Shown piece by piece: positions 21,526 through 45,847 of a DNA stretch of 64,000 bases. The position numbers and the translations under genes were made by a program. The notes under the pieces were generated by a model that did no database searches, was not told the origin of the DNA, and worked only from the letters and a program-made list of their open reading frames with translations. The stretch covers positions 1-64,000 of IMG/VR virus record IMGVR_UViG_3300036770_007539; one strand, 5' to 3'. Each line of letters starts with the position of its first letter. Positions within the stretch are counted from its first letter, which is position 1.

Positions 21526-21612
21526 ATGAGTCTTTTAACAACAATTTTTATCGGAACTATTGTTTTTGTTTTTTTATCATTTTATTTAATAAATAAGATG
21601 TTTGAAGATTAA
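21526..21612 (+). CDS. Small 28-aa membrane peptide (not in ORF track)
   Basis: MSLLTTIFIGTIVFVFLSFYLINKMFED*; TAATG coupling upstream and stop 1 nt before the ligase ATG. Confidence 0.5.
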   Translation: MSLLTTIFIGTIVFVFLSFYLINKMFED

Positions 21613-21613
21613 T

Positions 21614-22648
21614 ATGCAAGATTTGGCAAATATAAAACAAATATCTCAAATTATACCGCACCCTAACGCTGACGCTTTAGAAATTGCCATTATTGAAGGC
21701 TGGCAATGTGTAGTTAAAAAAGAGCAATTTAAGACCAATGATTTGGTAGTTTATATTGCTATTGATACGTTGCTTAATAGCAAACCTTCTTGGGCTAGCT
21801 TTCTTGAGCAACGCAATTGGAGAGTTAGACTAATTAAGTTGAGAGGCGAATTGTCTTATGGACTAATTTTGCCTCTTTCTGTTTTGCCAGAAAACACACC
21901 AATTGAATTAGACTCTGACGTTTCTAATCTACTAGGAGTAGTTAAATATCAGAAACCGGAATCAAATGCTGGCAAACATTCTCCAGGAAAAACTAAGCTT
22001 AATTCGTTTCCATCTTTTACTGGAATGCATGTTACTGATGAGGTTAATCTTCAGTCAAAGCTAAGAATGTTAAATGAGTTGCTTGGCAAGCCATATTATA
22101 TAACTACAAAGTGGGATGGAAGCAGCATGACAGCAATTTATACTGCTACCCCATCAAATCCTGATGGAGAATTTGTACTTGCCTCTAGAAATCGTTGGTT
22201 GGAATTTTCTGACGAAGCCACTGATAATTGGAGCAAAGCAGCTAAAAAATATAATCTTCCAGAGATTTTAAAGAATTCTAATTATGGATTTCAATGTGAG
22301 TTAGTAGCTCCTGGAATTCAATCAAACCGTGCAGGGCTATCAGAGGTAGAAATTAGAATTTTCAATTTATTTGATAAGACTACTAGAAAATATGCAAGCC
22401 TAAAAGAGTTGCAAGATTTTTGCAGTTCTACTGGATTGCCCATAGTAACTTTACTAGAATCTGGTGAGAGTTTTAATTACAGTTTAGAACAATTGCTACA
22501 ATTAGCCAAAACAGTTAAATATCCAAACAATTTTCCAGCAGAGGGCATTGTGTTGCGTCCTCAGGTTGGATTTTATAGTGAAACTTTAAAAGATAAATGG
22601 TCTTGTAAAGTTTTGAACAGTGATTATCTTTTAAAGTTTGAAGAGTGA
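21614..22648 (+). CDS. ATP-dependent RNA ligase (DRB0094/Rnl2-like with N-terminal OB domain)
   Basis: PHPNADALE N-domain; motif I TKWDGSS, III QCEL, IV AEGIVLR, V SCKVLNSDYL. Confidence 0.9.
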   Translation: MQDLANIKQISQIIPHPNADALEIAIIEGWQCVVKKEQFKTNDLVVYIAIDTLLNSKPSWASFLEQRNWRVRLIKLRGELSYGLILPLSVLPENTPIELDSDVSNLLGVVKYQKPESNAGKHSPGKTKLNSFPSFTGMHVTDEVNLQSKLRMLNELLGKPYYITTKWDGSSMTAIYTATPSNPDGEFVLASRNRWLEFSDEATDNWSKAAKKYNLPEILKNSNYGFQCELVAPGIQSNRAGLSEVEIRIFNLFDKTTRKYASLKELQDFCSSTGLPIVTLLESGESFNYSLEQLLQLAKTVKYPNNFPAEGIVLRPQVGFYSETLKDKWSCKVLNSDYLLKFEE

Positions 22649-23390: not shown

Positions 23391-23729
23391 ATGAAGCGTT
23401 ATATTATACTTTGTTTTTTAGCAGCCTGTTCAGATTCTGAACAACCATTGCCATCATGTCAACCTCATACTTGTGCCGAATTTCACCATGAAACGGTTCC
23501 AGTTTGTGGAAAAGTTTATGATGGCTGTGGAAAAGATCTAGATTGTGGACCTTGTGATACCTCTGATTTAGGGGGTGGAGGAGCCGAAGGAAATAGCTGT
23601 GTAGTATCTACATCTTCTGTATCTTCAAGTTCTTCTGCATCATCAAGTTCTACCACAGTTTCATCTGGATCTGGAGATCAAGGCGAAGGCGGAGCCAATA
23701 TGTGCGAAGACTTAACGTTTGATAAGTGA
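23391..23729 (+). CDS. Cys-rich lipoprotein of myxobacterial style
   Basis: Lipobox LAAC; CQPHTC...CGKVYDGCGKDLDCGPC module; Gly/Ser-rich linker. Confidence 0.7.
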   Translation: MKRYIILCFLAACSDSEQPLPSCQPHTCAEFHHETVPVCGKVYDGCGKDLDCGPCDTSDLGGGGAEGNSCVVSTSSVSSSSSASSSSTTVSSGSGDQGEGGANMCEDLTFDK

Positions 23730-24669: not shown

Positions 24670-25152
24670 ATGGAAATAGTTCAACCTACTTATGAGGCAG
24701 CATATAAGTTTTTTGATAAATATAAAAAATATAGAAATGAGTATAAAAATTCTTTTTCTTTAGCAGAAAAAAAGAAGTCATTTAATGAACATTATGGACC
24801 TGATTCTATGCCTAGTCCAAAGATGTTTGGATCAAAAGAAACAATAGCTGAAGCTGAAAATTCTATTGATAATGAAAAAAAGCATTTTACAGAATTGTTA
24901 GACTACACTGAAAATGAAGCAAAAAACGCTCTTATGGAATCAGAATGGGAATATCTTAATGAGGTGGGAGATGTTCTTGGCGAATTTGTGCTAGATGATC
25001 ATGTAAATTACGTAATATCAGAGTTTAAACAAGAATTATACCAAGATTTAGAACATAGTAGCGCAGACTCATCTTCAACAAAGATAGCAAAATTAACAAA
25101 AATAGTAAATGCATTTCACAAAAGTTGTAAAAAATTAAAAAATAGCCCTTGA
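24670..25152 (+). CDS. Hypothetical acidic protein with C-terminal helix motif
   Basis: Ends LTKIVNAFHKSCKKL. Confidence 0.65.
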   Translation: MEIVQPTYEAAYKFFDKYKKYRNEYKNSFSLAEKKKSFNEHYGPDSMPSPKMFGSKETIAEAENSIDNEKKHFTELLDYTENEAKNALMESEWEYLNEVGDVLGEFVLDDHVNYVISEFKQELYQDLEHSSADSSSTKIAKLTKIVNAFHKSCKKLKNSP

Positions 25153-25176
25153 CATTTAATGTCAGAGCGTTATACT
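25149..25176 (+). promoter_or_regulatory. Sigma70 promoter with palindrome over the -35 element
   Basis: TTGACA-N16-TATACT; TGACATT-t-AATGTCA dyad. Confidence 0.75.
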
Positions 25177-25202: not shown

Positions 25203-25769
25203 ATGACTTTTGATATTGAAAAAGCAAGCCCAACGCTTACTAGTTGGATGTTTAACGTAAAGCCTCATCTCAAGGCTTTATCAACAGAGCAAATTAGAGA
25301 GCATTGTAAGAAAAATAGCAAGCCATATGCTGTCATGATGGCTCAAATTATGGGTGATTTTAATTTTGCCTCTGTAATTCGTTCTGCCAATGCTTTTGGT
25401 GCAGAAAAAGTTTTTTATTTTGGAAAAAAGCGTTTTGACCGTCGAGGAACATGCGGAACACATCTTTATATTGATGTGCAATATCTTTCCACTCAAGAAC
25501 AAATTCAAGAATTGAAACAAGAATATACTTTTGTTGCTCTTGAAAATGTCAATCGCACACACTATCTTAGCGATTTTACTTGGAACACTGACAAAAAGCC
25601 ACTGATCATTATTGGTGAGGAAGGGACTGGTATTCCTTCTGAAGTGTTGTCTTTGTGTGATGTTCAAGTAGAAATTGAGCAATTTGGAAGCGTACCATCG
25701 GTAAATGCAGCAATTGCTGGTTCAATTGCAATGAATGATTTTGTAACTAAATATAAGAAGGGGCTTTGA
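25203..25769 (+). CDS. SpoU/TrmH-family RNA 2'-O-methyltransferase (probable start 25203)
   Basis: NFASVIRSANAFG, IIIGEEGTGI, SVNAAIAGSI SPOUT motifs; SD GAGGAG. Confidence 0.9.
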   Translation: MTFDIEKASPTLTSWMFNVKPHLKALSTEQIREHCKKNSKPYAVMMAQIMGDFNFASVIRSANAFGAEKVFYFGKKRFDRRGTCGTHLYIDVQYLSTQEQIQELKQEYTFVALENVNRTHYLSDFTWNTDKKPLIIIGEEGTGIPSEVLSLCDVQVEIEQFGSVPSVNAAIAGSIAMNDFVTKYKKGL

Positions 25770-26218
25770 TTATGATTCACATTCATACATCGAAATATGA
25801 CATTGATTTTGATAAAATGAGTTTTCTTGGACCTTGTTTTAAATTTCCAGAGCATAAAGTTCATTGGACTAAGCAAGGCTCAATTGCTTCAGAAATTTTA
25901 AAACTGCATGAATCTGGAAAAGATGTTCATGTAATTACTTTATCTGGCTATGTATTTTGGTCAATTATTGAGCAGGGTCTTACAAGAAAAACTTTGCACC
26001 GCAATGATTTGAAGATTCATTATCACCGATCAGAAGATGTGATTAATATATCTGGAATTGGTCCCAATCTAGAGCTATCAGCAGAATTAAATTCTCACTG
26101 GGATGGCGGCGGACATCACATTGCCAATATTCGTAGTATGCTTGGTTTCTATAAAGGAGATCAAGTAAACAAATATACATTTGATGATTTTGTTTCCTTA
26201 AACAAAAATTGTGCATAA
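25766..26218 (+). CDS. Degenerate C-terminal fragment of an ABC/AAA_21-type ATPase (DUF3696-like)
   Basis: FKFPEHKVHWTKQGSIA resembles IEEPExHLHPxxQxxLA; VHVITLSGY resembles the IIETHSDY H-loop; no Walker A. Confidence 0.45.
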   Translation: MIMIHIHTSKYDIDFDKMSFLGPCFKFPEHKVHWTKQGSIASEILKLHESGKDVHVITLSGYVFWSIIEQGLTRKTLHRNDLKIHYHRSEDVINISGIGPNLELSAELNSHWDGGGHHIANIRSMLGFYKGDQVNKYTFDDFVSLNKNCA

Positions 26219-26239
26219 GGTCAGTTTAACCAATAATTT

Positions 26240-27223
26240 ATGGAAGAAATAAATACAGTACTTTCAAATCTAAATCTAGATGCGCAATGCATTGATTATC
26301 AATCAACTAACTCTTCGGAGTTTTATGATATCAAACTTGGCTATAAATGCTCAGTAAAGAAATTTTCAAATTCTCTCAAAGAGCTTGAATTTAGACTAGG
26401 TTCTCATAATTCATTGTTTTTAACTTTACTGCCTAAGAGCGGTTGTGTAAGAATTCAAAATTTGAAAAATAATCTTCAGATTAAATTTGAAGATGTATAT
26501 TCCAAAAAAGAAGGGCTTCTCCCAGTAATCCTAGGCAAGGATTACTATGACAATATTATTTTTTCAGATTTTTCTAATCATCCCCATACTTTAATTTCTG
26601 GAACAACTGGATCTGGAAAAAGTATGGCTCTGCATAACATTATTTGTAATTTATTACTAAAAAATAATACAGAACTATATTTATCTGATTCTAAAGGAGT
26701 AGAATTTATTCCTTATGAACGTTTTTCTAAAATTTCAGAAATAGCTAAAACATATGATGAAAATATATATATGCTTAAAAAAATCCATTATATTATGGAG
26801 AGTAGGTTTGCAATAATGCGCTCTAAAAATCAAAATAATTTCCAAAAATTATTTGGAATCAATCCAATTGCGATTATAATTGATGAACTTTCGGATTTAT
26901 TGATTCAAGATAAAGATTCTGAATTAAAAAATATTTTACTATCCATTGCTCAAAAATCTCGAGCTGCTGGAATTTTTTTAATTGCGGCAACACAGCGTCC
27001 GTCAGTTGATATTCTATCTGGGACCATCAAAGCCAATTTCCCGGCTAGAATAGCCCTTAAAGCAGCCTCCCCAGTTGATTCCAAAGTAATCCTAGACCAG
27101 ACCGGAGCTGAAATGCTGAAAGGATATGGTGATGCAATTATTAACAATGAAAAATATCAATTTCTTAGATTTAAATTTCCACTAATTAATCATCAATCAA
27201 TAATTCAAAAAATTAAAAAATAA
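26240..27223 (+). CDS. FtsK/SpoIIIE-family ATPase domain protein (no TM segment, no gamma domain)
   Basis: HPHTLISGTTGSGKS, IIIDELSDL, AQKSRAAGIFLIAATQRPS, KANFPARIA, GAEMLKGYGD. Confidence 0.9.
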   Translation: MEEINTVLSNLNLDAQCIDYQSTNSSEFYDIKLGYKCSVKKFSNSLKELEFRLGSHNSLFLTLLPKSGCVRIQNLKNNLQIKFEDVYSKKEGLLPVILGKDYYDNIIFSDFSNHPHTLISGTTGSGKSMALHNIICNLLLKNNTELYLSDSKGVEFIPYERFSKISEIAKTYDENIYMLKKIHYIMESRFAIMRSKNQNNFQKLFGINPIAIIIDELSDLLIQDKDSELKNILLSIAQKSRAAGIFLIAATQRPSVDILSGTIKANFPARIALKAASPVDSKVILDQTGAEMLKGYGDAIINNEKYQFLRFKFPLINHQSIIQKIKK

Positions 27224-28536: not shown

Positions 28537-28941
28537 CTAAAAAGAAATAGCACTCTTGGCTTTTAGTTTCTTGATATTATCATAATAATCTTTCATAGCT
28601 TTAACGCACTTTCTGCATCTGCACTTATACTTTTTGTAGCGCCAGATGGTTCCATGCGATGAAAGTTTACCGTATTCTCTTTTTTCTAAAGTTTTTTCAT
28701 GATGACATGCTTTACATAGCAACTGACATTTATTAACTTCATCTAGTAAATTAACATCGGCTCGGTCAATAAACTTAGAAATAATAAATTTTTTTTGTTT
28801 TGGCTTCAAGTGATCAAATTCTAGATTTTTAGTCGAACCACAGCGCTCGCATTTTCCACCTAATAATTCTATCAGGCGCAATTTACGAGACTTTCTACGT
28901 TCTTTACGAGCAAGTGATTTTTCTGGAGTCCAAACTGACAT
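28537..28941 (-). CDS. HNH endonuclease
   Basis: GGKCERCG...LEFDH...CQLLCKACH; C-terminal HGT..Y...CRCRKC. Confidence 0.85.
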   Translation of the reverse strand: MSVWTPEKSLARKERRKSRKLRLIELLGGKCERCGSTKNLEFDHLKPKQKKFIISKFIDRADVNLLDEVNKCQLLCKACHHEKTLEKREYGKLSSHGTIWRYKKYKCRCRKCVKAMKDYYDNIKKLKAKSAISF

Positions 28942-30412: not shown

Positions 30413-30485
30413 TGGGGAGTCGCCTAGTGGTTATGGCAGCGGACTTTGAATCCGCCATTCGTGAGTTCGAATCTCACCTCCCCTG
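30413..30485 (+). tRNA. tRNA-Gln (anticodon TTG)
   Basis: Cloverleaf: anticodon arm GCGGA-CTTTGAA-TCCGC, T arm GTGAG-TTCGAAT-CTCAC; U1:U72 mismatch; CCA not encoded. Confidence 0.9.
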
Positions 30486-30507
30486 CTAACTTTCTGCAAT
30501 TAAAGCG

Positions 30508-32371: not shown

Positions 32372-32459
32372 AGAAGGGTGCCAGAGTGGTCGATCGGGCT
32401 TGATTGGAAATCAAGTGTACGTGAATAGCGTACCGGGGGTTCGAATCCCCCCTCTTCTG
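32372..32459 (+). tRNA. tRNA-Ser (anticodon GGA)
   Basis: CTTGA-TTGGAAA-TCAAG anticodon arm, long variable arm GTACG..CGTAC, GGGGG-TTCGAAT-CCCCC, G73; CCA not encoded. Confidence 0.92.
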
Positions 32460-33287
32460 CTAATTTTTAAGTAAATTATTAATTGTTACTGCATCAACAA
32501 AGAATGACATATTTGGAACTGCCGGTCTAAAAAAAGAACATATTCCAATTAATTTCCCATCTATGTCAAAAGCTCCGCCTCCAGAGTTGCCCATATAAAT
32601 CGGAGCTGTAATATGAACTAATTTTTGTTGATATCCTGTGGGATTTATTTCAGTTCTAAAACCTGAAATAATTCCAGTAAAATATGTAAATTCAACTCTT
32701 GCAGGATGCCCAACAATATGAACTTTTTCACCAATTTTTCCATTAGATCCAGATACTTCAACAAAACTATCTGAGCTGTAATCTAATGTTTTTAAAATCA
32801 TAATATCGTTATTATTGTCAAATTTTATTATTTTTGCTTTTTTAGTTGGTGGATTTTCTAAATTATAAGAATTTGATATTTCACCAAAAGTTTTAAATGA
32901 AACTTCTAACCCAAGCATATCATCAAGGTTAGGAGTGTAACTTAATGCTTTAATTATTTTAATTAAATCTTCTAATGTTTTTTCTTCTTTTTTAATAATT
33001 TCTTCGCTAATTTTAGCATCTTCTGGTTCTGGAATTAAGCTTTCTCCACAGTGCCTTGCGCTAATAATTATTTCTGGAGAAATAAAAACTCCTCCACAAA
33101 AAGTAGAATATTTTTTATTTTCTTCTGACGGGCGTAAAAACGCAACAGAGCTATTCTCTAATTTATAAACTAGATTTGTATTTTGCTGTTGCTCTATAGA
33201 TGCAACTTTTACATGCGACGGAATTGAACAACAACCAAGTAAGAAAAACAAACAAAAAAGAAAAGATATCTTGTTTTTCAAAGCCAC
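32460..33287 (-). CDS. Trypsin-like (S1) serine protease, probable lipoprotein
   Basis: Lipobox LLGC; CGGVFI, SARHC, NDIMIL, GNSGG; start may be TTG at 33281 after AGGAG. Confidence 0.85.
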   Translation of the reverse strand: MALKNKISFLFCLFFLLGCCSIPSHVKVASIEQQQNTNLVYKLENSSVAFLRPSEENKKYSTFCGGVFISPEIIISARHCGESLIPEPEDAKISEEIIKKEEKTLEDLIKIIKALSYTPNLDDMLGLEVSFKTFGEISNSYNLENPPTKKAKIIKFDNNNDIMILKTLDYSSDSFVEVSGSNGKIGEKVHIVGHPARVEFTYFTGIISGFRTEINPTGYQQKLVHITAPIYMGNSGGGAFDIDGKLIGICSFFRPAVPNMSFFVDAVTINNLLKN

Positions 33288-33798: not shown

Positions 33799-34827
33799 AT
33801 GATTAAGACCGATGTAGTTACCGATCTGCTATGGGGAGATAATGGTAAAGGAAAAATTACTCATTCGCTAATGAAAAATAATAAATATGATTATTGTCTG
33901 AAATTAGCAGGTTCTGCTAACGCAGGACATACCATTTATCATAATGGTGATAAATTTGTCACTCATTTGCTTCCAGCTGGAATATTTTTTAATATTCCCT
34001 CGATTATTGGCAGAAACTGCTTGGTTCATCCAGAAACTTTGTTTGCAGAAATTGAACAGCTGCAAAATCAATTTAATAAACATGAAGATCTGAAATCTAT
34101 TGATATTCAATCTTTAGTGAAGATTGATAAAAATACTTGTATTATTACAGACGATCATATTTACGAAGATTCTAAAGATACTATTATTGGATCAACTAAA
34201 CGTGGGGTCGGTCCTGCTGCTCGTGATAAATATGCTAGAACGGCAGTTCAAGTTCAAAATGTTGATTCATTAAAGGGATTCGTTGTAGATTTTCCAGAAA
34301 TAATCTATCAAGAACAAAATGCTTCTATCCTCGGAGAAGGAGCTCAAGGTTTTTATTTGGATGTTAATTTTGGTGATTATCCTTATGTAACTAGCACTCA
34401 CTGCTCTTTAGCAGCTGTTCCGTTGAGCGGAATTCCAATTCGATCAATTGACCGAATTTTTGGAGCAATTAAAATTTATGCTACTTATGTTGGAAAAAAA
34501 TCCTTTCAAGGAGAAGATTCTAGATTCGACATGATTGCTGAGGCAGGGTCTGAGTTTGGTTCTACTACTGGAAGAAAAAGACAAGTCAACTGGTTAGACT
34601 TAGACAAGTTAATTTATGCTATTAAGGCTAATGATGTAACTGATTTGATTATTTCTAAAATTGATATTTTTAGAAAATTAAATATCTTTGTCTTAGTTAA
34701 AGATAATAAAATCATTGAGTTTAATAACGAAAAAAATATGAAAACATACATTCATGATGTCTTGTACGATTCAAGATGTAATTCCATTAAGAATATAGTG
34801 TTTTCAGAATCTCCACATGACATCTGA
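33799..34827 (+). CDS. purA: Adenylosuccinate synthetase (short form)
   Basis: WGDNGKGK, NAGHT, IGSTKRGVGP, GEGAQG, YPYVTS, EFGSTTGRKR, SKID. Confidence 0.9.
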   Translation: MIKTDVVTDLLWGDNGKGKITHSLMKNNKYDYCLKLAGSANAGHTIYHNGDKFVTHLLPAGIFFNIPSIIGRNCLVHPETLFAEIEQLQNQFNKHEDLKSIDIQSLVKIDKNTCIITDDHIYEDSKDTIIGSTKRGVGPAARDKYARTAVQVQNVDSLKGFVVDFPEIIYQEQNASILGEGAQGFYLDVNFGDYPYVTSTHCSLAAVPLSGIPIRSIDRIFGAIKIYATYVGKKSFQGEDSRFDMIAEAGSEFGSTTGRKRQVNWLDLDKLIYAIKANDVTDLIISKIDIFRKLNIFVLVKDNKIIEFNNEKNMKTYIHDVLYDSRCNSIKNIVFSESPHDI

Positions 34828-34882: not shown

Positions 34883-34928
34883 ATGGGGGATGCCTCTAGG
34901 TGGGGCTAGTTGTTTAGAGAGGAAAAAA

Positions 34929-37106
34929 ATGTCAAAGCTAATTGTTCAAAAAGTTCAGACTCAGACGGACGGATCAATTAAGGATCACCAATATGGGATT
35001 GGTGATGTGGGTCTTGTTTTGGAAATTCTTCGAAATAAGCTTTATAAAGATCCTATTCTCGCTGTAGTTCGTGAGTATATCACCAATGCTCGTGATGCTC
35101 ATGTGGAAGTAGGAAAAGCAGATGTTCCAATTGTGGTTCATTTGCCTTCTTATGAATCCATGTATTTCAAAGTCCAAGATTTCGGTCCTGGTCTTTCACC
35201 TGAGCGAATTGAAAAGATTTTTTGCAATTATGCATCTTCTACTAAGCGCAATTCTGAAGACCAAGTAGGTTATTTCGGAATTGGCAGCAAGAGTGCATTT
35301 GCTTATTCTGACTCTTTTACCATTACATCAGTGGTAGATGGTAAGATTCGAACTTATTCATCTTATATTGATGAGTCTCGGCGTGGCAAGATTTCTTGTC
35401 TTTATGAAGCTGATACCGATCAGCCCAATGGAACAACTATTATTATTCCTGTAAAAAAATACGACCAAGATCGTTTTCTAGACAAGCTTCGATTTATTAC
35501 GGAATTTTGGAGTGTTCGTCCCAGCGTTTTTAAGGATGATTCGGAGTTTAAGATTTCATATGTAAATGAAAAGACGGTTTTTTCTGGCGATAATTGGAAA
35601 CTTGCTCGCAATCCCGATTATGATTTTCGAGGAACCTATGCAATCATGGGCGGAATTCCCTATGCTATTGATATGAATACTCATTTCGAGTCGCATCCTG
35701 CCCGTAATTTCTTCAATTATTCTTGCGTCCGAATTAATTTTAATAATTCTGATCTTAGCCTTGCCGCTTCTAGAGATTCACTTCACTATGATGCTAGAAC
35801 GATCAGGAACATTAATGATAAGCTTGATTCAATCATCAGCGAAATTAACATCAGGATTTCGGAGCAAATCTCACAGGAACCATCTTATAAAGATGCCCTC
35901 ATCAAATACAATGAAGCCTTGGACGCATTTCCTGAACTAAATAGAATCATTGGAAATGTAATCTACGATTCAAAACCAGTTCATAGGAATCCCAAGATTT
36001 CTATGTTTGGGAACAATTCTAGACTTACTTGGTATTCAAAAGTTGTAATGTCCAATGGCTTCAAAGACATTAAAGTCAAAACTGTTAATTATAAAAATCC
36101 AGGCGCAGACGCAGATTTTGCTAATATCTTGTCTAGAAAAGATACGGTAATCATTTTTAATGACCTAGCCGTTACTGACCTGAAAAAGTATGCAACAACA
36201 TTGTTCAATGATTCTAACGCATTGAACAATGTTGTTGTCCTGAGCATCGCAGAAACCAAAGATGATGTATCTAAGCACAAACATCTTTGGTTTGCAGAAG
36301 ATATTTGCTATGCAAAAATCTCAGAAATTACTCCAGGCAAGACGGTTCGACAAAGCAATCGCAGGTCTCTAACTCATAAACAAAATCTATTTCTTTATAG
36401 CTTTGATCCCTCATCTTCCAGGGTAGATTGTGGTCGTCATCTTGTGGAAGTTTCTCCAAATGAAACAATTGCATATTTTCTTTATGACCTAAAGACAAAT
36501 GCGCCTGTTAATCTAAGCAAAAATATTCTATCTTGTATTAAAAGTCTTGAATCCGCTTTGGGAATGAGGGTTTTTGCAGTGGCGACATCAAAGTCTGAAA
36601 AGATTCCATCAAATTGGAAATATATTGATGATGTTGTGACTGAGAAATTCAATTCCATCATGGAGCAATACGGTCTTTCTTCCCTTCAAGATTACTTGAA
36701 TTGCATGGCTATTAGGGAAAAAGTAGAACATTACAATGTTAATATCTTTAAGTCTCTTTTTAAAGACCAAATGAATAATAATAATTTTATTTCCTCATAC
36801 CTGAATAAGGTTCAATTTGCCCAAGACAAGTTCTCTTATGTCTGGGATAATTGCAATCTTAAAACTTTGGCAAAGCATATTAATAAATACCATTACCTTG
36901 AAACGGCTTCTATTCCAGCCTCAGAGGATTATGACTTTAATATTTTTTTCAATTCAGCAATTCAACAATATCCTATGCTTAAATTCTGTCCAGTAAGTTC
37001 ATATACTTCTGAAAAAGACATTAAAAGCGTCAATGATTACATTGAAATGGTCGATCGTCTTAACAAAGACGCGCATGTGTGTATTCATATGCCTTTGTGC
37101 GCTTGA
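34929..37106 (+). CDS. rIIA: rIIA-like protein (GHKL ATPase N-terminus; probable start 34929)
   Basis: LYKDPILAVVREYITNARDAH, VQDFGPGL, ASSTKR, GYFGIGSKSAFAY, GTTIII, SRDSL.Y; followed by rIIB. Confidence 0.9.
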   Translation: MSKLIVQKVQTQTDGSIKDHQYGIGDVGLVLEILRNKLYKDPILAVVREYITNARDAHVEVGKADVPIVVHLPSYESMYFKVQDFGPGLSPERIEKIFCNYASSTKRNSEDQVGYFGIGSKSAFAYSDSFTITSVVDGKIRTYSSYIDESRRGKISCLYEADTDQPNGTTIIIPVKKYDQDRFLDKLRFITEFWSVRPSVFKDDSEFKISYVNEKTVFSGDNWKLARNPDYDFRGTYAIMGGIPYAIDMNTHFESHPARNFFNYSCVRINFNNSDLSLAASRDSLHYDARTIRNINDKLDSIISEINIRISEQISQEPSYKDALIKYNEALDAFPELNRIIGNVIYDSKPVHRNPKISMFGNNSRLTWYSKVVMSNGFKDIKVKTVNYKNPGADADFANILSRKDTVIIFNDLAVTDLKKYATTLFNDSNALNNVVVLSIAETKDDVSKHKHLWFAEDICYAKISEITPGKTVRQSNRRSLTHKQNLFLYSFDPSSSRVDCGRHLVEVSPNETIAYFLYDLKTNAPVNLSKNILSCIKSLESALGMRVFAVATSKSEKIPSNWKYIDDVVTEKFNSIMEQYGLSSLQDYLNCMAIREKVEHYNVNIFKSLFKDQMNNNNFISSYLNKVQFAQDKFSYVWDNCNLKTLAKHINKYHYLETASIPASEDYDFNIFFNSAIQQYPMLKFCPVSSYTSEKDIKSVNDYIEMVDRLNKDAHVCIHMPLCA

Positions 37107-39052: not shown

Positions 39053-39125
39053 GTCGTTTTAGCTCAGCTAGCAGAGCACCTCATTGGTAATGAGGAGGTC
39101 ATGGGTGCAACTCCCATAAACGGCT
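39053..39125 (+). tRNA. tRNA-Thr (anticodon GGT), non-canonical D and T loops
   Basis: GTCGTTT/AAACGGC acceptor stem, CCTCA-TTGGTAA-TGAGG, T loop TGCAACT, D loop AGCTAGCA. Confidence 0.85.
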
Positions 39126-39877
39126 CAAAGTTCTAGTTCTTCTTCTAGTTTCATTAAAACTAGCCTAGACATTCCAAGATTGCTTTTTTCTTTGTCTAGA
39201 ACGACATAGATAAATAGATTATCTTGTTTTAATACGAAGGTAACTATGTGATAGTTGTTATTTAAGTTAATAACAATATCTTCAATTTTATCTTTAATGT
39301 TTAAGTTAGTTAAGAACTTCTTGTGAGATTTAACTACTTCAACCATGTAAGCGCAATATAATTCAAATTCAGAGGATTTATCTGAGTTTTGAATTATAGG
39401 CATTCCAGTTGTTATGTCTACAATGGAAGCGGCTAGTACGCCATCAAGCTCCATAATGGTGTTAAATTTTTCTTTTATGCTTTTAAAATAAGAAGAGCTT
39501 GGTTTTCTTGATGTAGAGCCTGATGAAGATTGTTCAGCTTCTGGCTCTAAGGCATAATTTTTAATTTTTCCCTCATCTAACAAGACGTAATATTCTAGAA
39601 TAAGTTCGGTCCATAATTTGTTAATTGACTCTACTTCTGGTAAAACATTGGGAGAAACTTTAAAAGTTCCATCCTCCCAAGTTAACATTTCATAAAAAGC
39701 ATCAATTCCAAAATTATTGGTAGTGGTAGCGTGAAGAACTCTTCCAGTAGAAACCCAAACTTCACCAGAAAATTTCTTATGAGTTATAGTTATATGAGCA
39801 GATGCTTGACTTAGTATGTAGAATTGAATTATATCTACCAGTGTCTCGGTAGAAATCTCGCCTTGAAATTTATTCAT
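39125..39877 (-). CDS. DUF4388 (PatA_N-like) domain fused to a roadblock/LC7-like domain
   Basis: FQGEI...LVDIIQ...GEVWVSTGRVLHA...AFYEMLTWEDGTF; C-terminal LDGVLAASIVDITTGM...IEDIVI...LFIYVVLDKEKSNLGMSRL. Confidence 0.8.
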   Translation of the reverse strand: MNKFQGEISTETLVDIIQFYILSQASAHITITHKKFSGEVWVSTGRVLHATTTNNFGIDAFYEMLTWEDGTFKVSPNVLPEVESINKLWTELILEYYVLLDEGKIKNYALEPEAEQSSSGSTSRKPSSSYFKSIKEKFNTIMELDGVLAASIVDITTGMPIIQNSDKSSEFELYCAYMVEVVKSHKKFLTNLNIKDKIEDIVINLNNNYHIVTFVLKQDNLFIYVVLDKEKSNLGMSRLVLMKLEEELEL

Positions 39878-42615: not shown

Positions 42616-43365
42616 ATGAAAAAATTAATTATCTTTGATTTGGACGGCACACTTGCCGAATCTAAATCTCCTATAACTAAATCTATGAGCATTGCTCTAA
42701 AGAAATTACTGCAAAATTATTCAGTTGCAATAATTTCAGGTGGAGCATTTCTTCAATTTGAAAAGCAATTTTTAAATAATTTATCTGTACCCGAAGATTT
42801 ATTATATAATTTATACTTGTTTCCCACTTGCGCCACATCATTCTTTAAATTTAAAGACAAACAATGGCAAAAAGTTTATTCTGAAGAGCTTTCAATTGAA
42901 GAAAAAGAAAAAATACTACAATCTTTTAAATTTACTTTTGAAAAAGTAGGTTTTGAAATTCCTAAAAAATTACTTTATGGAAACATTATTGAAGATCGAG
43001 GAACTCAAATTACTTTTTCTGCTCTAGGGCAAGATGCCCCTGTAGATCTTAAAAAGACTTGGGATCCATCGCATTTAAAAAGATTAAAGATGATTGAAAT
43101 ATTACAAGAGTATTTGCCTGATTTTGAAATTAGATCGGGCGGCTCAACTTCTATTGATATTACTAAAAAAGGAATCGATAAAGCTTATGGAATTGCTAAA
43201 ATTCAAGAATATTTAAAATTTTCTATTGACGAGATGCTCTTTATAGGTGATGCTATATTTCCAGGCGGCAATGATTATGCTGTAGTTTCAACGGGGGTGG
43301 AGTGCATTTCAACTCCAAGCCCAGAAGAAACGCAATTCATAATTTTAGAGCTATTAAAGAATTGA
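42616..43365 (+). CDS. HAD-IIB phosphomannomutase-like protein
   Basis: FDLDGTL, ISGG, IEDRGTQITFS, GGSTSIDIT..GIDK, FIGDAIFPGGND. Confidence 0.85.
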   Translation: MKKLIIFDLDGTLAESKSPITKSMSIALKKLLQNYSVAIISGGAFLQFEKQFLNNLSVPEDLLYNLYLFPTCATSFFKFKDKQWQKVYSEELSIEEKEKILQSFKFTFEKVGFEIPKKLLYGNIIEDRGTQITFSALGQDAPVDLKKTWDPSHLKRLKMIEILQEYLPDFEIRSGGSTSIDITKKGIDKAYGIAKIQEYLKFSIDEMLFIGDAIFPGGNDYAVVSTGVECISTPSPEETQFIILELLKN

Positions 43366-43390
43366 CGCCAGCTCTCATCGGGGCTATGCT
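43362..43390 (+). promoter_or_regulatory. Sigma70-type promoter
   Basis: TTGACG-N17-TATGCT inside an imperfect TTGAC...GTCAA inverted repeat. Confidence 0.7.
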
Positions 43391-43421
43391 GTCAACTAAT
43401 GTTCCTACTAACAGGGGATTT

Positions 43422-44876
43422 ATGATTAAAACTTGGTCAAAATATCAATCAGATATTTTTAATTTTATTAAAAATAATTCAGACAATTTAATTGTTGAAG
43501 CTTTGGCAGGCAGTGGAAAAACTTCTACAGCTGTTGAAGCATTAAAATATGTTTCTCCAGGCGAGAAAAGTATTTTCGTAGCATTTAATAAGAAGATTGC
43601 TGACGAATTACGAACTAGGGTTCCTGATTATGTCTCTACAGGAACGCTTCATTCTGTCGGATTAAAACATATTTCTAAGACTTATAAATCTGCTGTCGTG
43701 GCAGATAAGATGACTTTAATTTACAAGAAAGTCCTAGGAGAAGATAAAGAAAAAAACGAATTAATTTATCTTTTAACCAAAGCCGTTTCACTTTGTAAGT
43801 CATCTTTGGTTGATAAATATGAAGATATTGATGATTTGTTAGATCGTTTTGACATTGAACCTCCACACGACGTTGAACGTGCAACTTTTATTAATCATAT
43901 TATTTTCGGGTTAGATGCCTGTTTAAGGAAAACATCGTCTATTGATTTTGATGATATGATTTATTTTCCAGTAAAATTGAATATTCCAATTGATCAATAT
44001 GATAATGTCTTTGTAGATGAGGCGCAGGACTTAAATCCTGCGCAAATTGAATTCGTGCTTAAATTAGTTAAGCAACCAATTCCATCAAAAAGAAAATCTA
44101 AGAAAAATGATGGCAGTAAAGGTCGTTGCGTTGTCTTTATGGACCGCAACCAAGCAATTTATGCCTGGAGAGGAGCTGATTCAAATTCCTATGACAAGTT
44201 CAAGGAAAGACTCAGTGCGAAGGCGCTCCCGCTGTCGATCACATACCGATGCCCCCACAGCGTAGTAAGAGAGGCACAGAAGCTTGTACCCCATTTAGAA
44301 GCTGCTCCAGGAGCATCAGAAGGCTCCGTAGACTGGCAAGAGTATGACAAGCTAATTTCTAACGCTCCAATCGGCTCTTATATTATTTCTAGGACTAATG
44401 CTCCTTTGATTAGGACTGCTTTAAAGTTGATTAGGCAGAAAACTCCTTGCGCAATTCTAGGCAGGGACATTGGTGATAACATTAATAATTTAATTAAGGC
44501 TTCAAAAGCTAAAAAAGTAGATAAGCTACACGCTTATATTGAGAAATGGAAAAATAAAGAGATGTCGAGACTGCTAAGTGTAGGCAAAGATATTAATCAT
44601 ATTTTAGATAAGTATGAATGTCTGGAGGCTTTGATGGAGGGTTGCGACACAGTAGATCAAGTTAAACAAAATATCGCCTCTCTCTTTATAACCAAAGACC
44701 CTAATCGCATTGTTACTCTGGGATCTACCCATCAAATGAAGGGTTTGGAATCAAAAGAAGTGTATATGTTCATTAATACATATAATGAATCTTCTCAGGA
44801 AGAAAAAAATCTTAAATATGTAGCAATTACTAGATCAAAAAACAATTTACATTACGTTAAATATCCTAAAAAATGA
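43422..44876 (+). CDS. UvrD/REP-family SF1 helicase (probable start 43422)
   Basis: ALAGSGKT, AFNKKIA, VDEAQD, DRNQAIY.WRGA, TYRCP, THQMKGLE, YVAITRSK. Confidence 0.9.
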   Translation: MIKTWSKYQSDIFNFIKNNSDNLIVEALAGSGKTSTAVEALKYVSPGEKSIFVAFNKKIADELRTRVPDYVSTGTLHSVGLKHISKTYKSAVVADKMTLIYKKVLGEDKEKNELIYLLTKAVSLCKSSLVDKYEDIDDLLDRFDIEPPHDVERATFINHIIFGLDACLRKTSSIDFDDMIYFPVKLNIPIDQYDNVFVDEAQDLNPAQIEFVLKLVKQPIPSKRKSKKNDGSKGRCVVFMDRNQAIYAWRGADSNSYDKFKERLSAKALPLSITYRCPHSVVREAQKLVPHLEAAPGASEGSVDWQEYDKLISNAPIGSYIISRTNAPLIRTALKLIRQKTPCAILGRDIGDNINNLIKASKAKKVDKLHAYIEKWKNKEMSRLLSVGKDINHILDKYECLEALMEGCDTVDQVKQNIASLFITKDPNRIVTLGSTHQMKGLESKEVYMFINTYNESSQEEKNLKYVAITRSKNNLHYVKYPKK

Positions 44877-45847
44877 ATAAAAAAATACTTATATTGGGCA
44901 ATGGATTTATAGCTTCTGAGTTTTCTAGGAGCTATTCTCCTTATTTATATAATTTCGATCCTGATTCCTTGGTGAAGGCAAGTGATTCTTCTCCTCCTGA
45001 ATATATTGGAGCCCTGATACAGGTTCCTTTATTATCATCAACGGATGATAAAGTGGCTCAGTACTTTGATAAAATTCCAGTAAACCACGATTCTATCATG
45101 GAGATTGTTAGCAGATATCAGCCCAATGTAATTATTAATTGTATTGGTAAAACTGGAAAGCCAAATGTAGACTGGTGTGAAACTCATCAAGATGAAACAG
45201 TTGAAGCTAATTTAATATTTCCTACATTATTAGCTCAGATTTGTAATAAGCAGTCTATTCATTTAGTTCACATTGGTAGCGGCTGTATAAATTACGGAGC
45301 ATCGCCTCGCAGCATTGGATGCATGTATGAGCCTGGATGGAGGGAGACGGATTTTTCAAATCCTAAATCTTTTTATTCAAAAGTTAAATATGCGGCTGAT
45401 TTGGCTTTATCAGGTTATGATAATGTCACCATTTTCAGAATTAGAATGCCAATTTCACCAATGCCCAACCCTAGAAACTTGATTACTAAGTTATTGGGCT
45501 ATAAGAAAATCATTCAAGAGCCTAACTCAATGACTTTTACAGTAGACGTTTTAAGAGCTTGCAAATGGGCAATTGACAATAATAAATTTGGTATTTATAA
45601 TTTGGCTCACAAGAATCCTTTGACGGCTTATAATATTGTAAAAGAATATTGTAAATATAATCCTTCCCATCAATTTGAGTCTTTGAGTTTGTCAGGGCTA
45701 AGTTCTTTGACTACGGCTACAAGATCTAATTGCATCTTAGACCTGTCTAAGATTGAAAATGACGGATTTATATTTTCAGATCTAACCTTGGAATCTTGTA
45801 TACGTCAATATTTTAACAATGAAAACATTCAAAGAGGTAATTCATGA
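44873..45847 (+). CDS. NDP-4-keto-6-deoxyglucose epimerase/reductase (RmlD/NRS-ER-like)
   Basis: ILILGNGFIA, NCIGKTGKPNVDWCE, SGCI, SFYSKVK, RIRMPI, PRNLITKL. Confidence 0.85.
   Translation: MNKKILILGNGFIASEFSRSYSPYLYNFDPDSLVKASDSSPPEYIGALIQVPLLSSTDDKVAQYFDKIPVNHDSIMEIVSRYQPNVIINCIGKTGKPNVDWCETHQDETVEANLIFPTLLAQICNKQSIHLVHIGSGCINYGASPRSIGCMYEPGWRETDFSNPKSFYSKVKYAADLALSGYDNVTIFRIRMPISPMPNPRNLITKLLGYKKIIQEPNSMTFTVDVLRACKWAIDNNKFGIYNLAHKNPLTAYNIVKEYCKYNPSHQFESLSLSGLSSLTTATRSNCILDLSKIENDGFIFSDLTLESCIRQYFNNENIQRGNS

What the first reader, a model, noticed from the sequence alone, without database searches (positions are those of the whole stretch)
25766..26218. Catalytically dead fragment of a defence-type ABC ATPase: candidate decoy inhibitor
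Seen: FKFPEHKVHWTKQGSIASEI...GKDVHVITLSGYVF...DLKIHY...W.GG follows the Walker B/D-loop (EEPExHLHPxxQ), H-loop (ETHS) and DUF3696-like tail of AAA_21/ABC ATPases. The catalytic acidic residues and the His are replaced, and Walker A is missing. Established: such ATPases are the sensor cores of PARIS, Septu, Gabija-like and some retron systems. Inference: a dominant-negative mimic that poisons a defence oligomer.
Basis: inference. Interest (0 to 1): 0.6.

Follow-up and report, generated by a model that had tools for sequence, protein, structure and literature searches.

The report
Dead mini ABC-ATPase in a jumbo phage
A 148-residue protein of an uncultured jumbo phage is a stripped-down, catalytically dead copy of the core of the OLD/AAA_21-type ABC ATPases that bacteria use as sensors in antiphage systems; the resemblance is real, but the idea that it works as a decoy against such systems is still untested.

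Summary
The ORF is real. Its likely start is the ATG at 25772, not the TTG at 25766. It is conserved under strong purifying selection (dN/dS 0.07). It belongs to a tiny family of about 14 sequence clusters, found only on uncultured phage contigs.

No Pfam, PHROG, PADLOC, NCBIfam or PDB-sequence match exists.
- **Fold.** A confident AlphaFold model (pLDDT 87) matches ABC-type ATPases in 49 of the 50 best rows of an unbiased search of 48,161 PDB chains (Z 5.5-7.4).
- **Atlas neighbours.** Every named ESM Atlas shape neighbour is an AAA_15/AAA_21/DUF3696 cluster.
- **Profile comparison.** hhalign places residues 22-80 on the Walker B / D-loop / H-loop stretch of the P2 Old family (P 5.6e-4; 0 of 200 column shuffles reach the score).
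- **Catalytic residues.** Walker B Asp-Glu is Lys24-Phe25 and the H-loop His is Leu57. Walker A and the signature motif are absent in every family member.

The 'DUF3696-like tail' is not supported by sequence.

The gene follows a SpoU RNA methylase in 7 of 9 contexts, near an RNA ligase and phage tRNAs. The decoy function is plausible (about 0.3) but nothing here tests it.

The parts
25772..26218 (+). Gene for the 148-aa dead mini ABC-ATPase (P0001), stop codon included.
   Evidence: All homologues start M-I-x-x-H. dN/dS is 0.07 against the closest relative.
25757..25763 (+). Shine-Dalgarno-like GAAGGGG, 8 nt before the ATG and inside the 3' end of the SpoU gene. This suggests translational coupling.
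   Evidence: Read directly from the sequence.
25772..25792 (+). Residues 1-7 (MIHIHTS), beta-strand 1. It superposes on the strand that leads into the P-loop of ABC ATPases, but no P-loop follows. His5 is invariant.
   Evidence: Model. VIA alignments start at model residue 1 and chain residue ~25-35. Alignment.
25832..25876 (+). Residues 21-35, PCFKFPEHKVHWTKQ: the Walker B / D-loop equivalent. Lys24 takes the place of the Walker B Asp and Phe25 that of the catalytic Glu. Pro26-Glu27 and His31 match the PE..LHP of OLD-type ATPases.
   Evidence: hhalign. Family table.
25925..25960 (+). Residues 52-63, VHVITLSGYVFW: the H-loop strand equivalent. Thr56, Ser58 and Gly59 are invariant. The His of T-H-S is Leu57; only P0010 keeps His.
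26060..26191 (+). Residues 97-140: conserved C-terminal tail (GPNLELSAE..HWDGGG..GFYKGDQV..FDDF), with Lys128 nearly invariant and Asp130 invariant. It matches no known family and its role is unknown.
   Evidence: No PF12476 match. Model pLDDT is 76-86 here.
25203..25769 (+). SpoU/TrmH-type RNA 2'-O-methyltransferase (188 aa from the ATG at 25203). It lies directly upstream, with its stop 2 nt before the target's ATG.
   Evidence: PF00588, E 2.2e-23. Relatives are 186-192 aa. The adjacency is kept in 7 of 9 contexts.
25149..25176 (+). Best sigma-70-like promoter match of the 8-kb region (TTGACA-16-TATACT, 11 of 12), just before the SpoU ATG. It may mark the start of the SpoU-target transcription unit.
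   Evidence: This is a consensus match only, in AT-rich DNA.
26240..27223 (+). FtsK/SpoIIIE-like ATPase (327 aa), the next gene downstream. It is syntenic in relatives, which often carry a ~97-100 aa ORF in between that is absent here.
   Evidence: PF01580, E 1.6e-27; phrog_1358, E 9e-70. Synteny.
21602..22648 (+). RNA ligase (PHA02142 OB fold plus RNA_ligase) in the same + strand gene block. Listed for context: an RNA repair theme.
   Evidence: Syntenic in relatives.

Best explanation
**What it is** (identity confidence about 0.75). The gene encodes a stand-alone pseudo-ATPase. It is a compact alpha/beta domain descended from, or at least built like, the RecA-like core of OLD-type (AAA_15/AAA_21) ABC ATPases.

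It keeps:
- the strand that normally leads into the P-loop;
- the Walker B strand, the D-loop segment and the helix after it;
- the H-loop strand;
- the following helix and beta-hairpin.

It has lost the P-loop, the helical/signature subdomain and every catalytic side chain (Asp-Glu to Lys-Phe, His to Leu). It therefore cannot bind or hydrolyse ATP in the ABC manner and must act by binding something.

**How it most likely works** (inferred, not shown). During infection it is made together with a phage RNA 2'-O-methylase, in a block that also holds an RNA ligase and phage tRNAs. There it interferes with a host ABC-ATPase-based antiphage system of the OLD / Gabija / PARIS / Septu / retron type, many of which are tRNases.

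It would offer a look-alike of the D-loop / H-loop face, which sits at the ATPase dimer interface. Pairing with a host protomer, or with the partner that docks on that lobe, would then give a complex without a composite ATP site, which cannot switch on the nuclease.

**Status of each step.**
- Shown: fold, register of motifs, loss of catalytic residues, selection, phage-only distribution, gene neighbourhood.
- Inferred: any binding partner and any anti-defence effect.
For: **Fold.**
- Model pLDDT 87.3, pTM 0.85.
- 49 of the top 50 of 48,161 PDB chains are ABC ATPases, Z 5.5-7.4, about 90-100 residues at 2.5-3.0 A.
- The first, weaker model gave the same picture.
- All of the Foldseek top 50 are ABC ATPases, led by retron Eco8, Septu PtuA, GajA and AriA.
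- ESM Atlas: every named shape neighbour is AAA_15/AAA_21 with or without DUF3696/DUF2813, with TM by query 0.52-0.70.

**Sequence.**
- hhalign against the Old family: P 5.6e-4, and 0 of 200 shuffles reach the score.
- The register is reproduced by two disjoint halves of the family and by two other ABC families.
- Old scores higher than transporter NBDs and the phage's own SbcC-like protein, so the nearest kin are OLD-type.
- Motif skeleton residues are invariant (Pro26, Thr56, Ser58, Gly59), while catalytic ones are replaced in all 14 members.

**Real gene.** dN/dS is 0.07.

**Phage-only.** No relative was found in 185,579 prokaryote genomes. There are 5 true representatives among 1.84 billion proteins.

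**A recurrent viral design.** Four virus-only Atlas clusters of 123-160 aa share the fold, one of them carrying DUF3696 in 29% of members. The best BFVD matches are small proteins of jumbo phages such as AR9, phiRSL1, CBB and GAP32.

**Thematic fit.**
- OLD, PARIS, Septu and retron PtuAB are ABC-ATPase-plus-nuclease tRNases countered by phage tRNAs and RNA repair (papers read).
- The D-loop residue Tyr304 of P2 OLD is part of its inter-dimer 'lock'. It aligns with target residue 29.
Against: - No binding or anti-defence evidence of any kind exists. The host is unknown.
- Every single structural match is below Z 8, and the best Foldseek E is 0.1. hhalign probability is only 30%. Homology is therefore likely, not proven.
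- The protein lacks Walker A and the signature motif, which carry most of the canonical ATP-sandwich dimer contacts. A head-to-head 'poison' dimer would have a small interface.
- It evolves slowly (omega 0.07, like the RNA ligase at 0.06 and unlike the FtsK-like gene at 0.24). That is not what fast arms-race inhibitors usually show.
- It is tightly and persistently linked to a SpoU methylase, which suggests a role inside the phage's own RNA module.
- Known inhibitors of this ATPase class (Gad1, Gad2, Oad2) are not ABC mimics.
Confidence: 0.3

Rival explanations
1. It is a non-catalytic partner of the phage's own RNA module. The dead ABC core serves as an accessory or specificity subunit of the adjacent minimal SpoU 2'-O-methylase, or of the SpoU / RNA-ligase repair set. 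It would help to mark or protect tRNA or rRNA, for instance against host anticodon nucleases.
For: - SpoU lies directly upstream with stop/start coupling in the window and in relatives down to 36% identity, and one gene away at 29%.
- The pair stays together even where an IS200/IS605 element has landed just upstream.
- A promoter-like site precedes SpoU.
- The target's selective constraint resembles that of the enzymes around it.
- SpoU and RNA ligase are also neighbours in the unrelated Rhodococcus phage NiceHouse.
Against: - SpoU homologues at 36-40% identity in LR756508.1 and NiceHouse have no family member anywhere in their genomes.
- The two most distant family members (P0012, P0013) have no SpoU upstream.
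- The protein is near neutral (pI 6.0-6.9 in most members, 7.9 in P0010) and not basic as RNA binders tend to be.
- All contexts come from one phage lineage, so the synteny may be inherited rather than functional.
- No precedent is known to me for an ABC-like partner of a SPOUT enzyme.
Confidence: 0.2
2. It is a small ligand-binding protein. The former nucleotide-site face carries the invariant residues: His5, Pro26, Thr56, Ser58 and Gly59, perhaps joined by Lys128 and Asp130 of the tail. That face would bind a nucleotide or signalling molecule, so the protein would act as a sponge or sensor rather than as a protein mimic.
For: - The invariant residues sit at the C-terminal edge of the parallel sheet, where ABC ATPases bind ATP.
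- The tail motif K-[GT]-D is conserved, and reads G-K-T-D in P0010 and P0013.
- The protein is unusually rich in histidine, 6-12 per chain.
- Many phage anti-defence proteins are small sponges (review read).
Against: - There is no P-loop, and no canonical [AG]xxxxGK[ST] in any member.
- No structural neighbour is a known sponge.
- Whether the tail lies over the old site could not be checked, because no coordinates were available to me.
Confidence: 0.1
3. The ABC likeness is convergence. The protein would be a generic three-layer alpha/beta domain of unrelated origin and unknown role, and the motif matches are chance.
For: - All Z scores are under 8, and the tool warns that such values can reflect a common arrangement.
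- De novo designed P-loop-like folds also appear in the lists.
- hhalign probability is only 30%.
- HMMER finds nothing in Pfam, PDB or 1.84 billion proteins that links it to ATPases.
Against: - The hit lists are uniform: 49 of 50 and 50 of 50 are ABC ATPases, and all named Atlas neighbours are AAA_15/AAA_21.
- The sequence alignment falls in exactly the register that the fold demands.
- It beats all 200 shuffles and repeats in disjoint subsets.
- One member keeps T-H-S and another keeps I-H-P.
Confidence: 0.15
4. It is a decaying remnant of a phage-borne OLD/AAA_21 gene and has no function of its own.
For: It is short, lacks all catalytic motifs, and bacterial Atlas clusters of 108-196 aa with AAA_21 hits look like truncated genes.
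Against: - dN/dS is 0.07-0.2 across the family.
- Start, length and several motifs are conserved from 88% down to 25% identity.
- There are no stops or frameshifts.
- There is no upstream N-terminal half; the upstream gene is a complete SpoU.
Confidence: 0.02

Closest known systems
OLD-family / AAA_15-AAA_21 ABC ATPases (P2 Old, Gabija GajA, Septu and retron PtuA, PARIS AriA, retron Eco8 effector, Menshen NsnB)
   Same: - Same core fold over about 90-110 residues.
- Same order and spacing of the Walker B strand, PE..(L)HP D-loop segment, helix, T-x-S H-loop strand, helix and hairpin.
- These are the best profile match (Old family, P 5.6e-4) and the only named Atlas neighbours.
   Different: - 148 aa instead of 350-750.
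- No Walker A, no Q-loop/helical subdomain, no signature motif, no dimerisation insert and no nuclease or effector-docking domain.
- Walker B Asp-Glu is Lys-Phe and the H-loop His is Leu.
- It is below every Pfam threshold and is encoded by a phage rather than a defence island.
Virus-only ESM Atlas clusters of 123-160 aa and small BFVD proteins of jumbo phages (AR9, phiRSL1, pf16, CBB, GAP32)
   Same: Similar size and predicted shape (TM 0.5-0.7; BFVD E 1e-3 to 1e-2, probability about 1.0). All are from phages and all are uncharacterised. One cluster carries DUF3696 in 29% of its members.
   Different: - No detectable sequence similarity to this family: tblastn against 50,697 phage records finds nothing.
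Known phage inhibitors of OLD-class defence ATPases: Gad1, Gad2 (anti-Gabija), Oad2 (anti-OLD)
   Same: They would share the proposed target class, and Oad2 shares the principle of direct binding that blocks activation.
   Different: Gad1 is a ~300-aa octamer-forming shell, Gad2 is a nucleotidyltransferase, and Oad2 is related to P22 EaE. None is described as an ABC-ATPase look-alike. No similarity to them was tested here, because their sequences were not in hand.
DUF3696 (PF12476), the helical tail after the ATPase of AAA_21 proteins
   Same: In Menshen, Septu and PARIS this C-terminal part docks the effector, which would suit a decoy.
   Different: No PF12476 match in the protein or in the phage record. 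The conserved tail of this family (GFYKGDQV..FDDF) aligns with nothing known.

Membership tests
ABC ATPase superfamily, AAA_21 / AAA_15 (OLD-type) | Match to the family HMM above the curated threshold (PF13304 27 bits, PF13175 32.1 bits) | tested here: not met
   No Pfam match at E <= 1 or 10 for any of 13 members. No PF13304 or PF13175 match in the phage record.
ABC ATPase superfamily, AAA_21 / AAA_15 (OLD-type) | Walker A P-loop GxxxxGK[ST] | tested here: not met
   Absent in all 14 members.
ABC ATPase superfamily, AAA_21 / AAA_15 (OLD-type) | ABC signature motif (LSGGQ-like) and helical subdomain | tested here: not met
   No LSGG. The model has no helical subdomain. 'TLSG' at residues 56-59 aligns with the H-loop, not the signature.
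ABC ATPase superfamily, AAA_21 / AAA_15 (OLD-type) | Walker B hhhhDE with catalytic Glu | tested here: not met
   The aligned positions are Lys24-Phe25, and K/R/A plus F/Y/H across the family.
ABC ATPase superfamily, AAA_21 / AAA_15 (OLD-type) | H-loop histidine | tested here: not met
   Leu57. Across the family it is L, F, W or R, and His only in P0010.
ABC ATPase superfamily, AAA_21 / AAA_15 (OLD-type) | RecA-like core fold with ABC strand order | tested here: met
   49 of the top 50 of 48,161 chains are ABC ATPases, Z 5.5-7.4. Atlas TM by query is 0.52-0.70 to AAA_15/21 clusters. Each single score is moderate.
ABC ATPase superfamily, AAA_21 / AAA_15 (OLD-type) | Significant profile-profile similarity (common descent) | tested here: inconclusive
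   hhalign P 5.6e-4, probability 30%, correct register, 0 of 200 shuffles. This is suggestive but below the usual 90% line.
DUF3696 (PF12476) | Match to the family HMM (22 bits) | tested here: not met
Anti-defence protein (decoy of a defence ATPase) | Binds a defence protein and relieves defence when expressed | not testable with these tools
   The host and target are unknown. The only complex job went to the SpoU pair and gave no answer.
RNase H-like fold | Fold and the DEDD catalytic set | tested here: not met
   There is only a noise-level HMM match (E 0.9) to the HIV RNase H helix-strand segment. No RNase H appears in any fold list.
2H phosphoesterase (two H-x-T/S motifs about 80 residues apart) | Two strictly conserved HxT/S motifs and the 2H fold | tested here: not met
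   H5-T6 and H83/H85 are 80 residues apart, but Thr6, His83 and His85 vary across the family. No 2H enzyme appears in the fold lists.

The most novel reading that the evidence does not exclude
Jumbo phages carry a previously undescribed class of anti-defence proteins: catalytically dead mini ABC-ATPase cores that copy the dimer-interface / effector-docking lobe of OLD-type sensors. Such a protein would jam tRNA-cleaving systems such as OLD, PARIS, Septu and retron PtuAB. Here it would be deployed as one arm of an anti-tRNase island, together with an RNA ligase, a 2'-O-methylase and phage tRNAs. The structurally similar virus-only clusters (AR9, phiRSL1, CBB, GAP32 and others) would be further members.
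Probability: 0.2. Interest if true: 0.8.

Novelty: new variant of a known kind. Interest (0 to 1): 0.5.

Why it matters
ABC ATPases of the AAA_15/AAA_21 type are the sensor cores of some of the commonest antiphage systems: Gabija, Septu, PARIS, OLD, several retrons and Menshen. Very few phage inhibitors of them are known, and none works by mimicry.

A phage-encoded dead copy of the sensor's core lobe would be the bacterial-virus counterpart of the domain decoys that eukaryotic viruses use against host immune assemblies. It would also give a simple sequence/structure rule for finding more of them.

Even if the decoy idea fails, the family is a clean example of a pseudo-enzyme cut down to about 40% of its parent domain and kept under strong selection. 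It also flags a conserved SpoU methylase / RNA ligase module in huge phages that deserves study.

The idea is directly testable with standard co-expression and pull-down assays.

Tried and rejected
1. **Family scans.** Pfam, PHROGs, PADLOC, NCBIfam and PDB-sequence scans of the protein and of all members found nothing. The only hits were phrog_12026 at E 0.016 and noise-level RNase H / DegV matches at E 0.7-1.6.
2. **Search for relatives.**
   - The word search and the exhaustive 1.84-billion-protein search gave only about 14 clusters. P0014 is a spurious repeat protein.
   - Nothing was found in 50,697 phage records or in 185,579 prokaryote genomes.
   - IMG/VR held one identical copy.
3. **Complex prediction of the SpoU methylase with the target.** The tool gave no verdict (score 0.00). 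By its own rule this is no evidence either way.
4. **Split ABC ATPase idea.** No Walker A occurs in any small ORF next to the gene in relatives, and none of those ORFs has a homologue in the window. The upstream gene is a complete SpoU. Rejected.
5. **Origin from the phage's own SbcC/Rad50-like ATPase (G000 71.4-73.6 kb).** The register is the same but the score is only 17.4 (P 0.15), against 28.3 for a single P2 Old sequence. Not favoured.
6. **2H phosphoesterase and RNase H readings.** Rejected; see the membership test.
7. **P-loop remnant in the tail** (G-K-T-D in two distant members). It is not canonical and not conserved. Left as unexplained.
9. **Host inference.**
   - A genome-contig scan with the FtsK-like protein found nothing.
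   - The nearest phage records by SpoU and RNA ligase are uncultured huge phages LR756508 and LR756501/03.
Full report
**What is there**

The window is the first 64 kb of a 301-kb IMG/VR virus record, judged 71% complete. It is an AT-rich (33% GC) jumbo or huge phage.

Its nearest database kin, by SpoU and RNA ligase, are uncultured huge phages LR756508 and LR756501/03.

The finding lies in a long + strand gene block:
- RNA ligase (21602-22648);
- several small ORFs;
- a SpoU-type RNA 2'-O-methylase (25203-25769);
- the target (25772-26218);
- an FtsK/SpoIIIE-like ATPase (26240-27223);
- further small genes.

All homologues begin M-I-x-x-H, which corresponds to the ATG at 25772, and a GAAGGGG run lies 8 nt upstream.

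**A real, rare gene**

Word-index and exhaustive searches find only about 14 sequence clusters, with 25-88% identity to the target. All come from metagenomic phage-like contigs. None is in cultured phage records or in 185,579 prokaryote genomes.

Against the closest relative dN/dS is 0.07. That compares with 0.06 for the RNA ligase, 0.03 for SpoU and 0.24 for the FtsK-like gene. It is not a decaying fragment.

**The observation**

No family library and no PDB sequence recognises the protein. The resemblance had to be tested by fold and by profile-profile comparison.

*Models.* A first model from 9 sequences was mediocre (pLDDT 66). Adding four distant members gave pLDDT 87.3 and pTM 0.85.

*Fold searches.*
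- In an unbiased alignment to 48,161 PDB representatives, 49 of the 50 best rows are ABC-type ATPases: transporter NBDs, Rad50, SMC, UvrA, MutS2 and GajA.
- These rows align 88-102 residues at 2.5-3.0 A, with Z 5.5-7.4. They run from the strand before the P-loop to the C-terminal hairpin.
- Foldseek's top 50 are all ABC ATPases. They are led by defence proteins (retron Eco8, PtuA, GajA, AriA), but E is only 0.1-0.7.
- In the ESM Atlas, every named shape neighbour is an AAA_15/AAA_21 cluster, often with DUF3696 or DUF2813. TM by query is 0.52-0.60 for the whole protein and 0.56-0.70 for residues 20-100.
- No single score is strong and the tool's caution about Z below 8 applies. The uniformity of three independent lists is the argument.

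*Sequence.*
- hhalign of the family profile against one P2 Old sequence aligns residues 24-80 with Old 298-360 (P 0.0026).
- Against a profile of 116 Old relatives the score is 33.8 (P 5.6e-4, probability 30%).
- 200 column shuffles of the query gave mean 15.6, sd 3.0, max 27.5.
- The nine close members alone (P 0.0054) and the four distant members alone (P 6.4e-4) hit the same Old columns.
- A profile of E. coli transporter NBDs (P 0.013) and the phage's own SbcC-like protein (P 0.15) do the same, with lower scores. The nearest kin are therefore OLD-type.

*Register.*
- Lys24 corresponds to the Walker B Asp and Phe25 to the catalytic Glu.
- Pro26-Glu27 and His31 correspond to the PE..LHP segment.
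- Thr56-Leu57-Ser58 correspond to T-H-S of the H-loop.
- Pro26, Thr56, Ser58 and Gly59 are invariant, while the catalytic positions are replaced in every member.
- P0010 still has T-H-S and P0011 still has I-H-P.
- No member has a Walker A, an LSGG motif or hhhhDE.

*What fails.*
- The 'DUF3696-like tail' has no sequence support.
- The conserved tail (GFYKGDQV..FDDF; Lys128, Asp130) matches nothing.
- The word 'fragment' is imprecise. Strand 1 takes the place of the P-loop strand, so this is a closed mini-core with an internal deletion, not a C-terminal piece.

**Surroundings**

*SpoU linkage.*
- SpoU is directly upstream, often with a 4-nt overlap, in the window and in relatives at 88, 70, 60, 51 and 36% identity. 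It is one gene away at 29%.
- The pair survives an IS200/IS605 insertion just upstream.
- The two most distant members have other upstream genes.
- SpoU homologues in LR756508.1 and Rhodococcus phage NiceHouse have no family member in their genomes.
- In NiceHouse the SpoU gene again sits near an RNA ligase.

*Other context.*
- Relatives' neighbourhoods add RlaP, HAD_SAK_2, R2K and CYTH genes. At least RlaP belongs to the RNA-repair genes described for jumbo phages (PMC7824862).
- The window also carries tRNA-Gln, tRNA-Ser and tRNA-Thr genes.
- The phage record has no AAA_21/AAA_15 gene. Its only ABC ATPase is the usual SbcC-like one.

**How it may work**

Without a P-loop and catalytic residues, the protein can only bind.

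*Literature read here.*
- OLD, PARIS, Septu and retron PtuAB are ABC-ATPase sensors coupled to nucleases that cleave tRNAs. Phages answer with tRNAs and RNA repair.
- The C-terminal part of such ATPases docks the effector (PMC12065111).
- In P2 OLD the D-loop residue Tyr304 is part of the inter-dimer lock. That residue aligns with target residue 29.

*Reading I rank first (about 0.3).* A mimic of this lobe, made together with an RNA methylase and ligase, would fit an anti-tRNase island.

*Arguments against it.*
- There is no direct evidence.
- The gene evolves slowly.
- The signature and P-loop contacts that make ABC dimers are missing.
- The SpoU linkage points to an in-house role (rival, 0.2).

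*Other rivals.*
- A ligand-binding role of the conserved ex-nucleotide face (0.1).
- Pure convergence (0.15).

The complex prediction for SpoU plus target gave no verdict and counts for nothing.

**Comparison and novelty**

The protein fails every catalytic membership criterion of the ABC ATPases and every HMM threshold. It is not a member in the functional sense. It is best described as a degenerate, miniaturised derivative of the OLD-type core.

Known inhibitors of this ATPase class (Gad1, Gad2, Oad2) are unrelated in design. I found no paper describing such mini-ABC proteins.

Several virus-only Atlas clusters and small proteins of cultured jumbo phages share the predicted shape. The design may therefore be widespread and unstudied.

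I rate it a new variant of a known kind, with interest 0.5. The descriptive claim is solid enough to act on, and the functional claim is open and cheaply testable.

**Limits**

- The host is unknown.
- Model coordinates could not be inspected, so the position of the tail relative to the old active site is unknown.
- No sequences of the structurally similar viral clusters were available.

Noticed in passing
window 21602-22648, 25203-25769; tRNAs at 30413-30486, 32372-32460, 39053-39126: An RNA ligase (PHA02142 OB fold plus RNA_ligase), a SpoU 2'-O-methylase and three phage tRNA genes (Gln-TTG, Ser-GGA, Thr-GGT) lie within 18 kb. This looks like an RNA repair/protection theme. SpoU and RNA ligase are also neighbours in the unrelated Rhodococcus phage NiceHouse (L052).
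   Followed up: partly
window 26219-26239, versus L002 3068-3370, L049 5437-5730, L048 5425-5718: Relatives carry a conserved ~97-100 aa ORF between the target and the FtsK-like gene. In this window it is absent (22-nt gap) and has no homologue elsewhere in the 64 kb.
   Followed up: partly
window 26240-27223: A short (327 aa) FtsK/SpoIIIE-like ATPase without membrane or gamma domains. Its best PADLOC matches are the C-terminal ATPase parts of SspH and mad8, and it evolves much faster (58% identity, omega 0.24) than its neighbours.
   Followed up: no
window 23391-23729: A 112-aa ORF with a lipoprotein-like signal (…LAAC), a Cys-rich middle and a Ser-rich low-complexity tail. Its local GC is 42% against 33% for the window. 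It may be a phage-encoded surface lipoprotein.
   Followed up: no
window 28537-28941 (- strand): The only minus-strand gene in the + block: a 134-aa Cys/His-rich HNH-like endonuclease, probably a homing endonuclease. A syntenic minus-strand gene in a relative has a faint HNH hit.
   Followed up: no
L048 2624-4235; L051 4595-5917: IS200/IS605-type elements (Y1 transposase plus TnpB/Cas12f-like) are inserted next to the SpoU gene in two different huge-phage contigs. This suggests a recurrent insertion site or hotspot beside SpoU.
   Followed up: no
window 33799-34827, 34890-37106, 43302-44876, 44873-45847, 58778-60742: Other annotated genes: a short adenylosuccinate synthetase (342 aa), a 738-aa GHKL (HATPase_c_3) protein, a UvrD-like helicase, an RmlD/epimerase-like protein and a type IA topoisomerase. 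Several ORFs of 460-550 aa have no Pfam match.
   Followed up: no
P0001 residues 123-132 (window 26138-26167): The tail motif G-F-Y-K-G-D reads G-I-G-K-T-D or E-I-G-K-T-D in two distant members. That looks P-loop-like but is not canonical. Lys128 is nearly invariant and Asp130 invariant, and their role is unexplained.
   Followed up: partly
G000 contig positions ~71383-73600 (outside the window; L045): An SbcC/Rad50-like ABC ATPase (AAA_23, E 1.3e-22, 726-aa frame) preceded by a 396-aa ORF, presumably the usual SbcCD-type pair of jumbo phages.
   Followed up: partly
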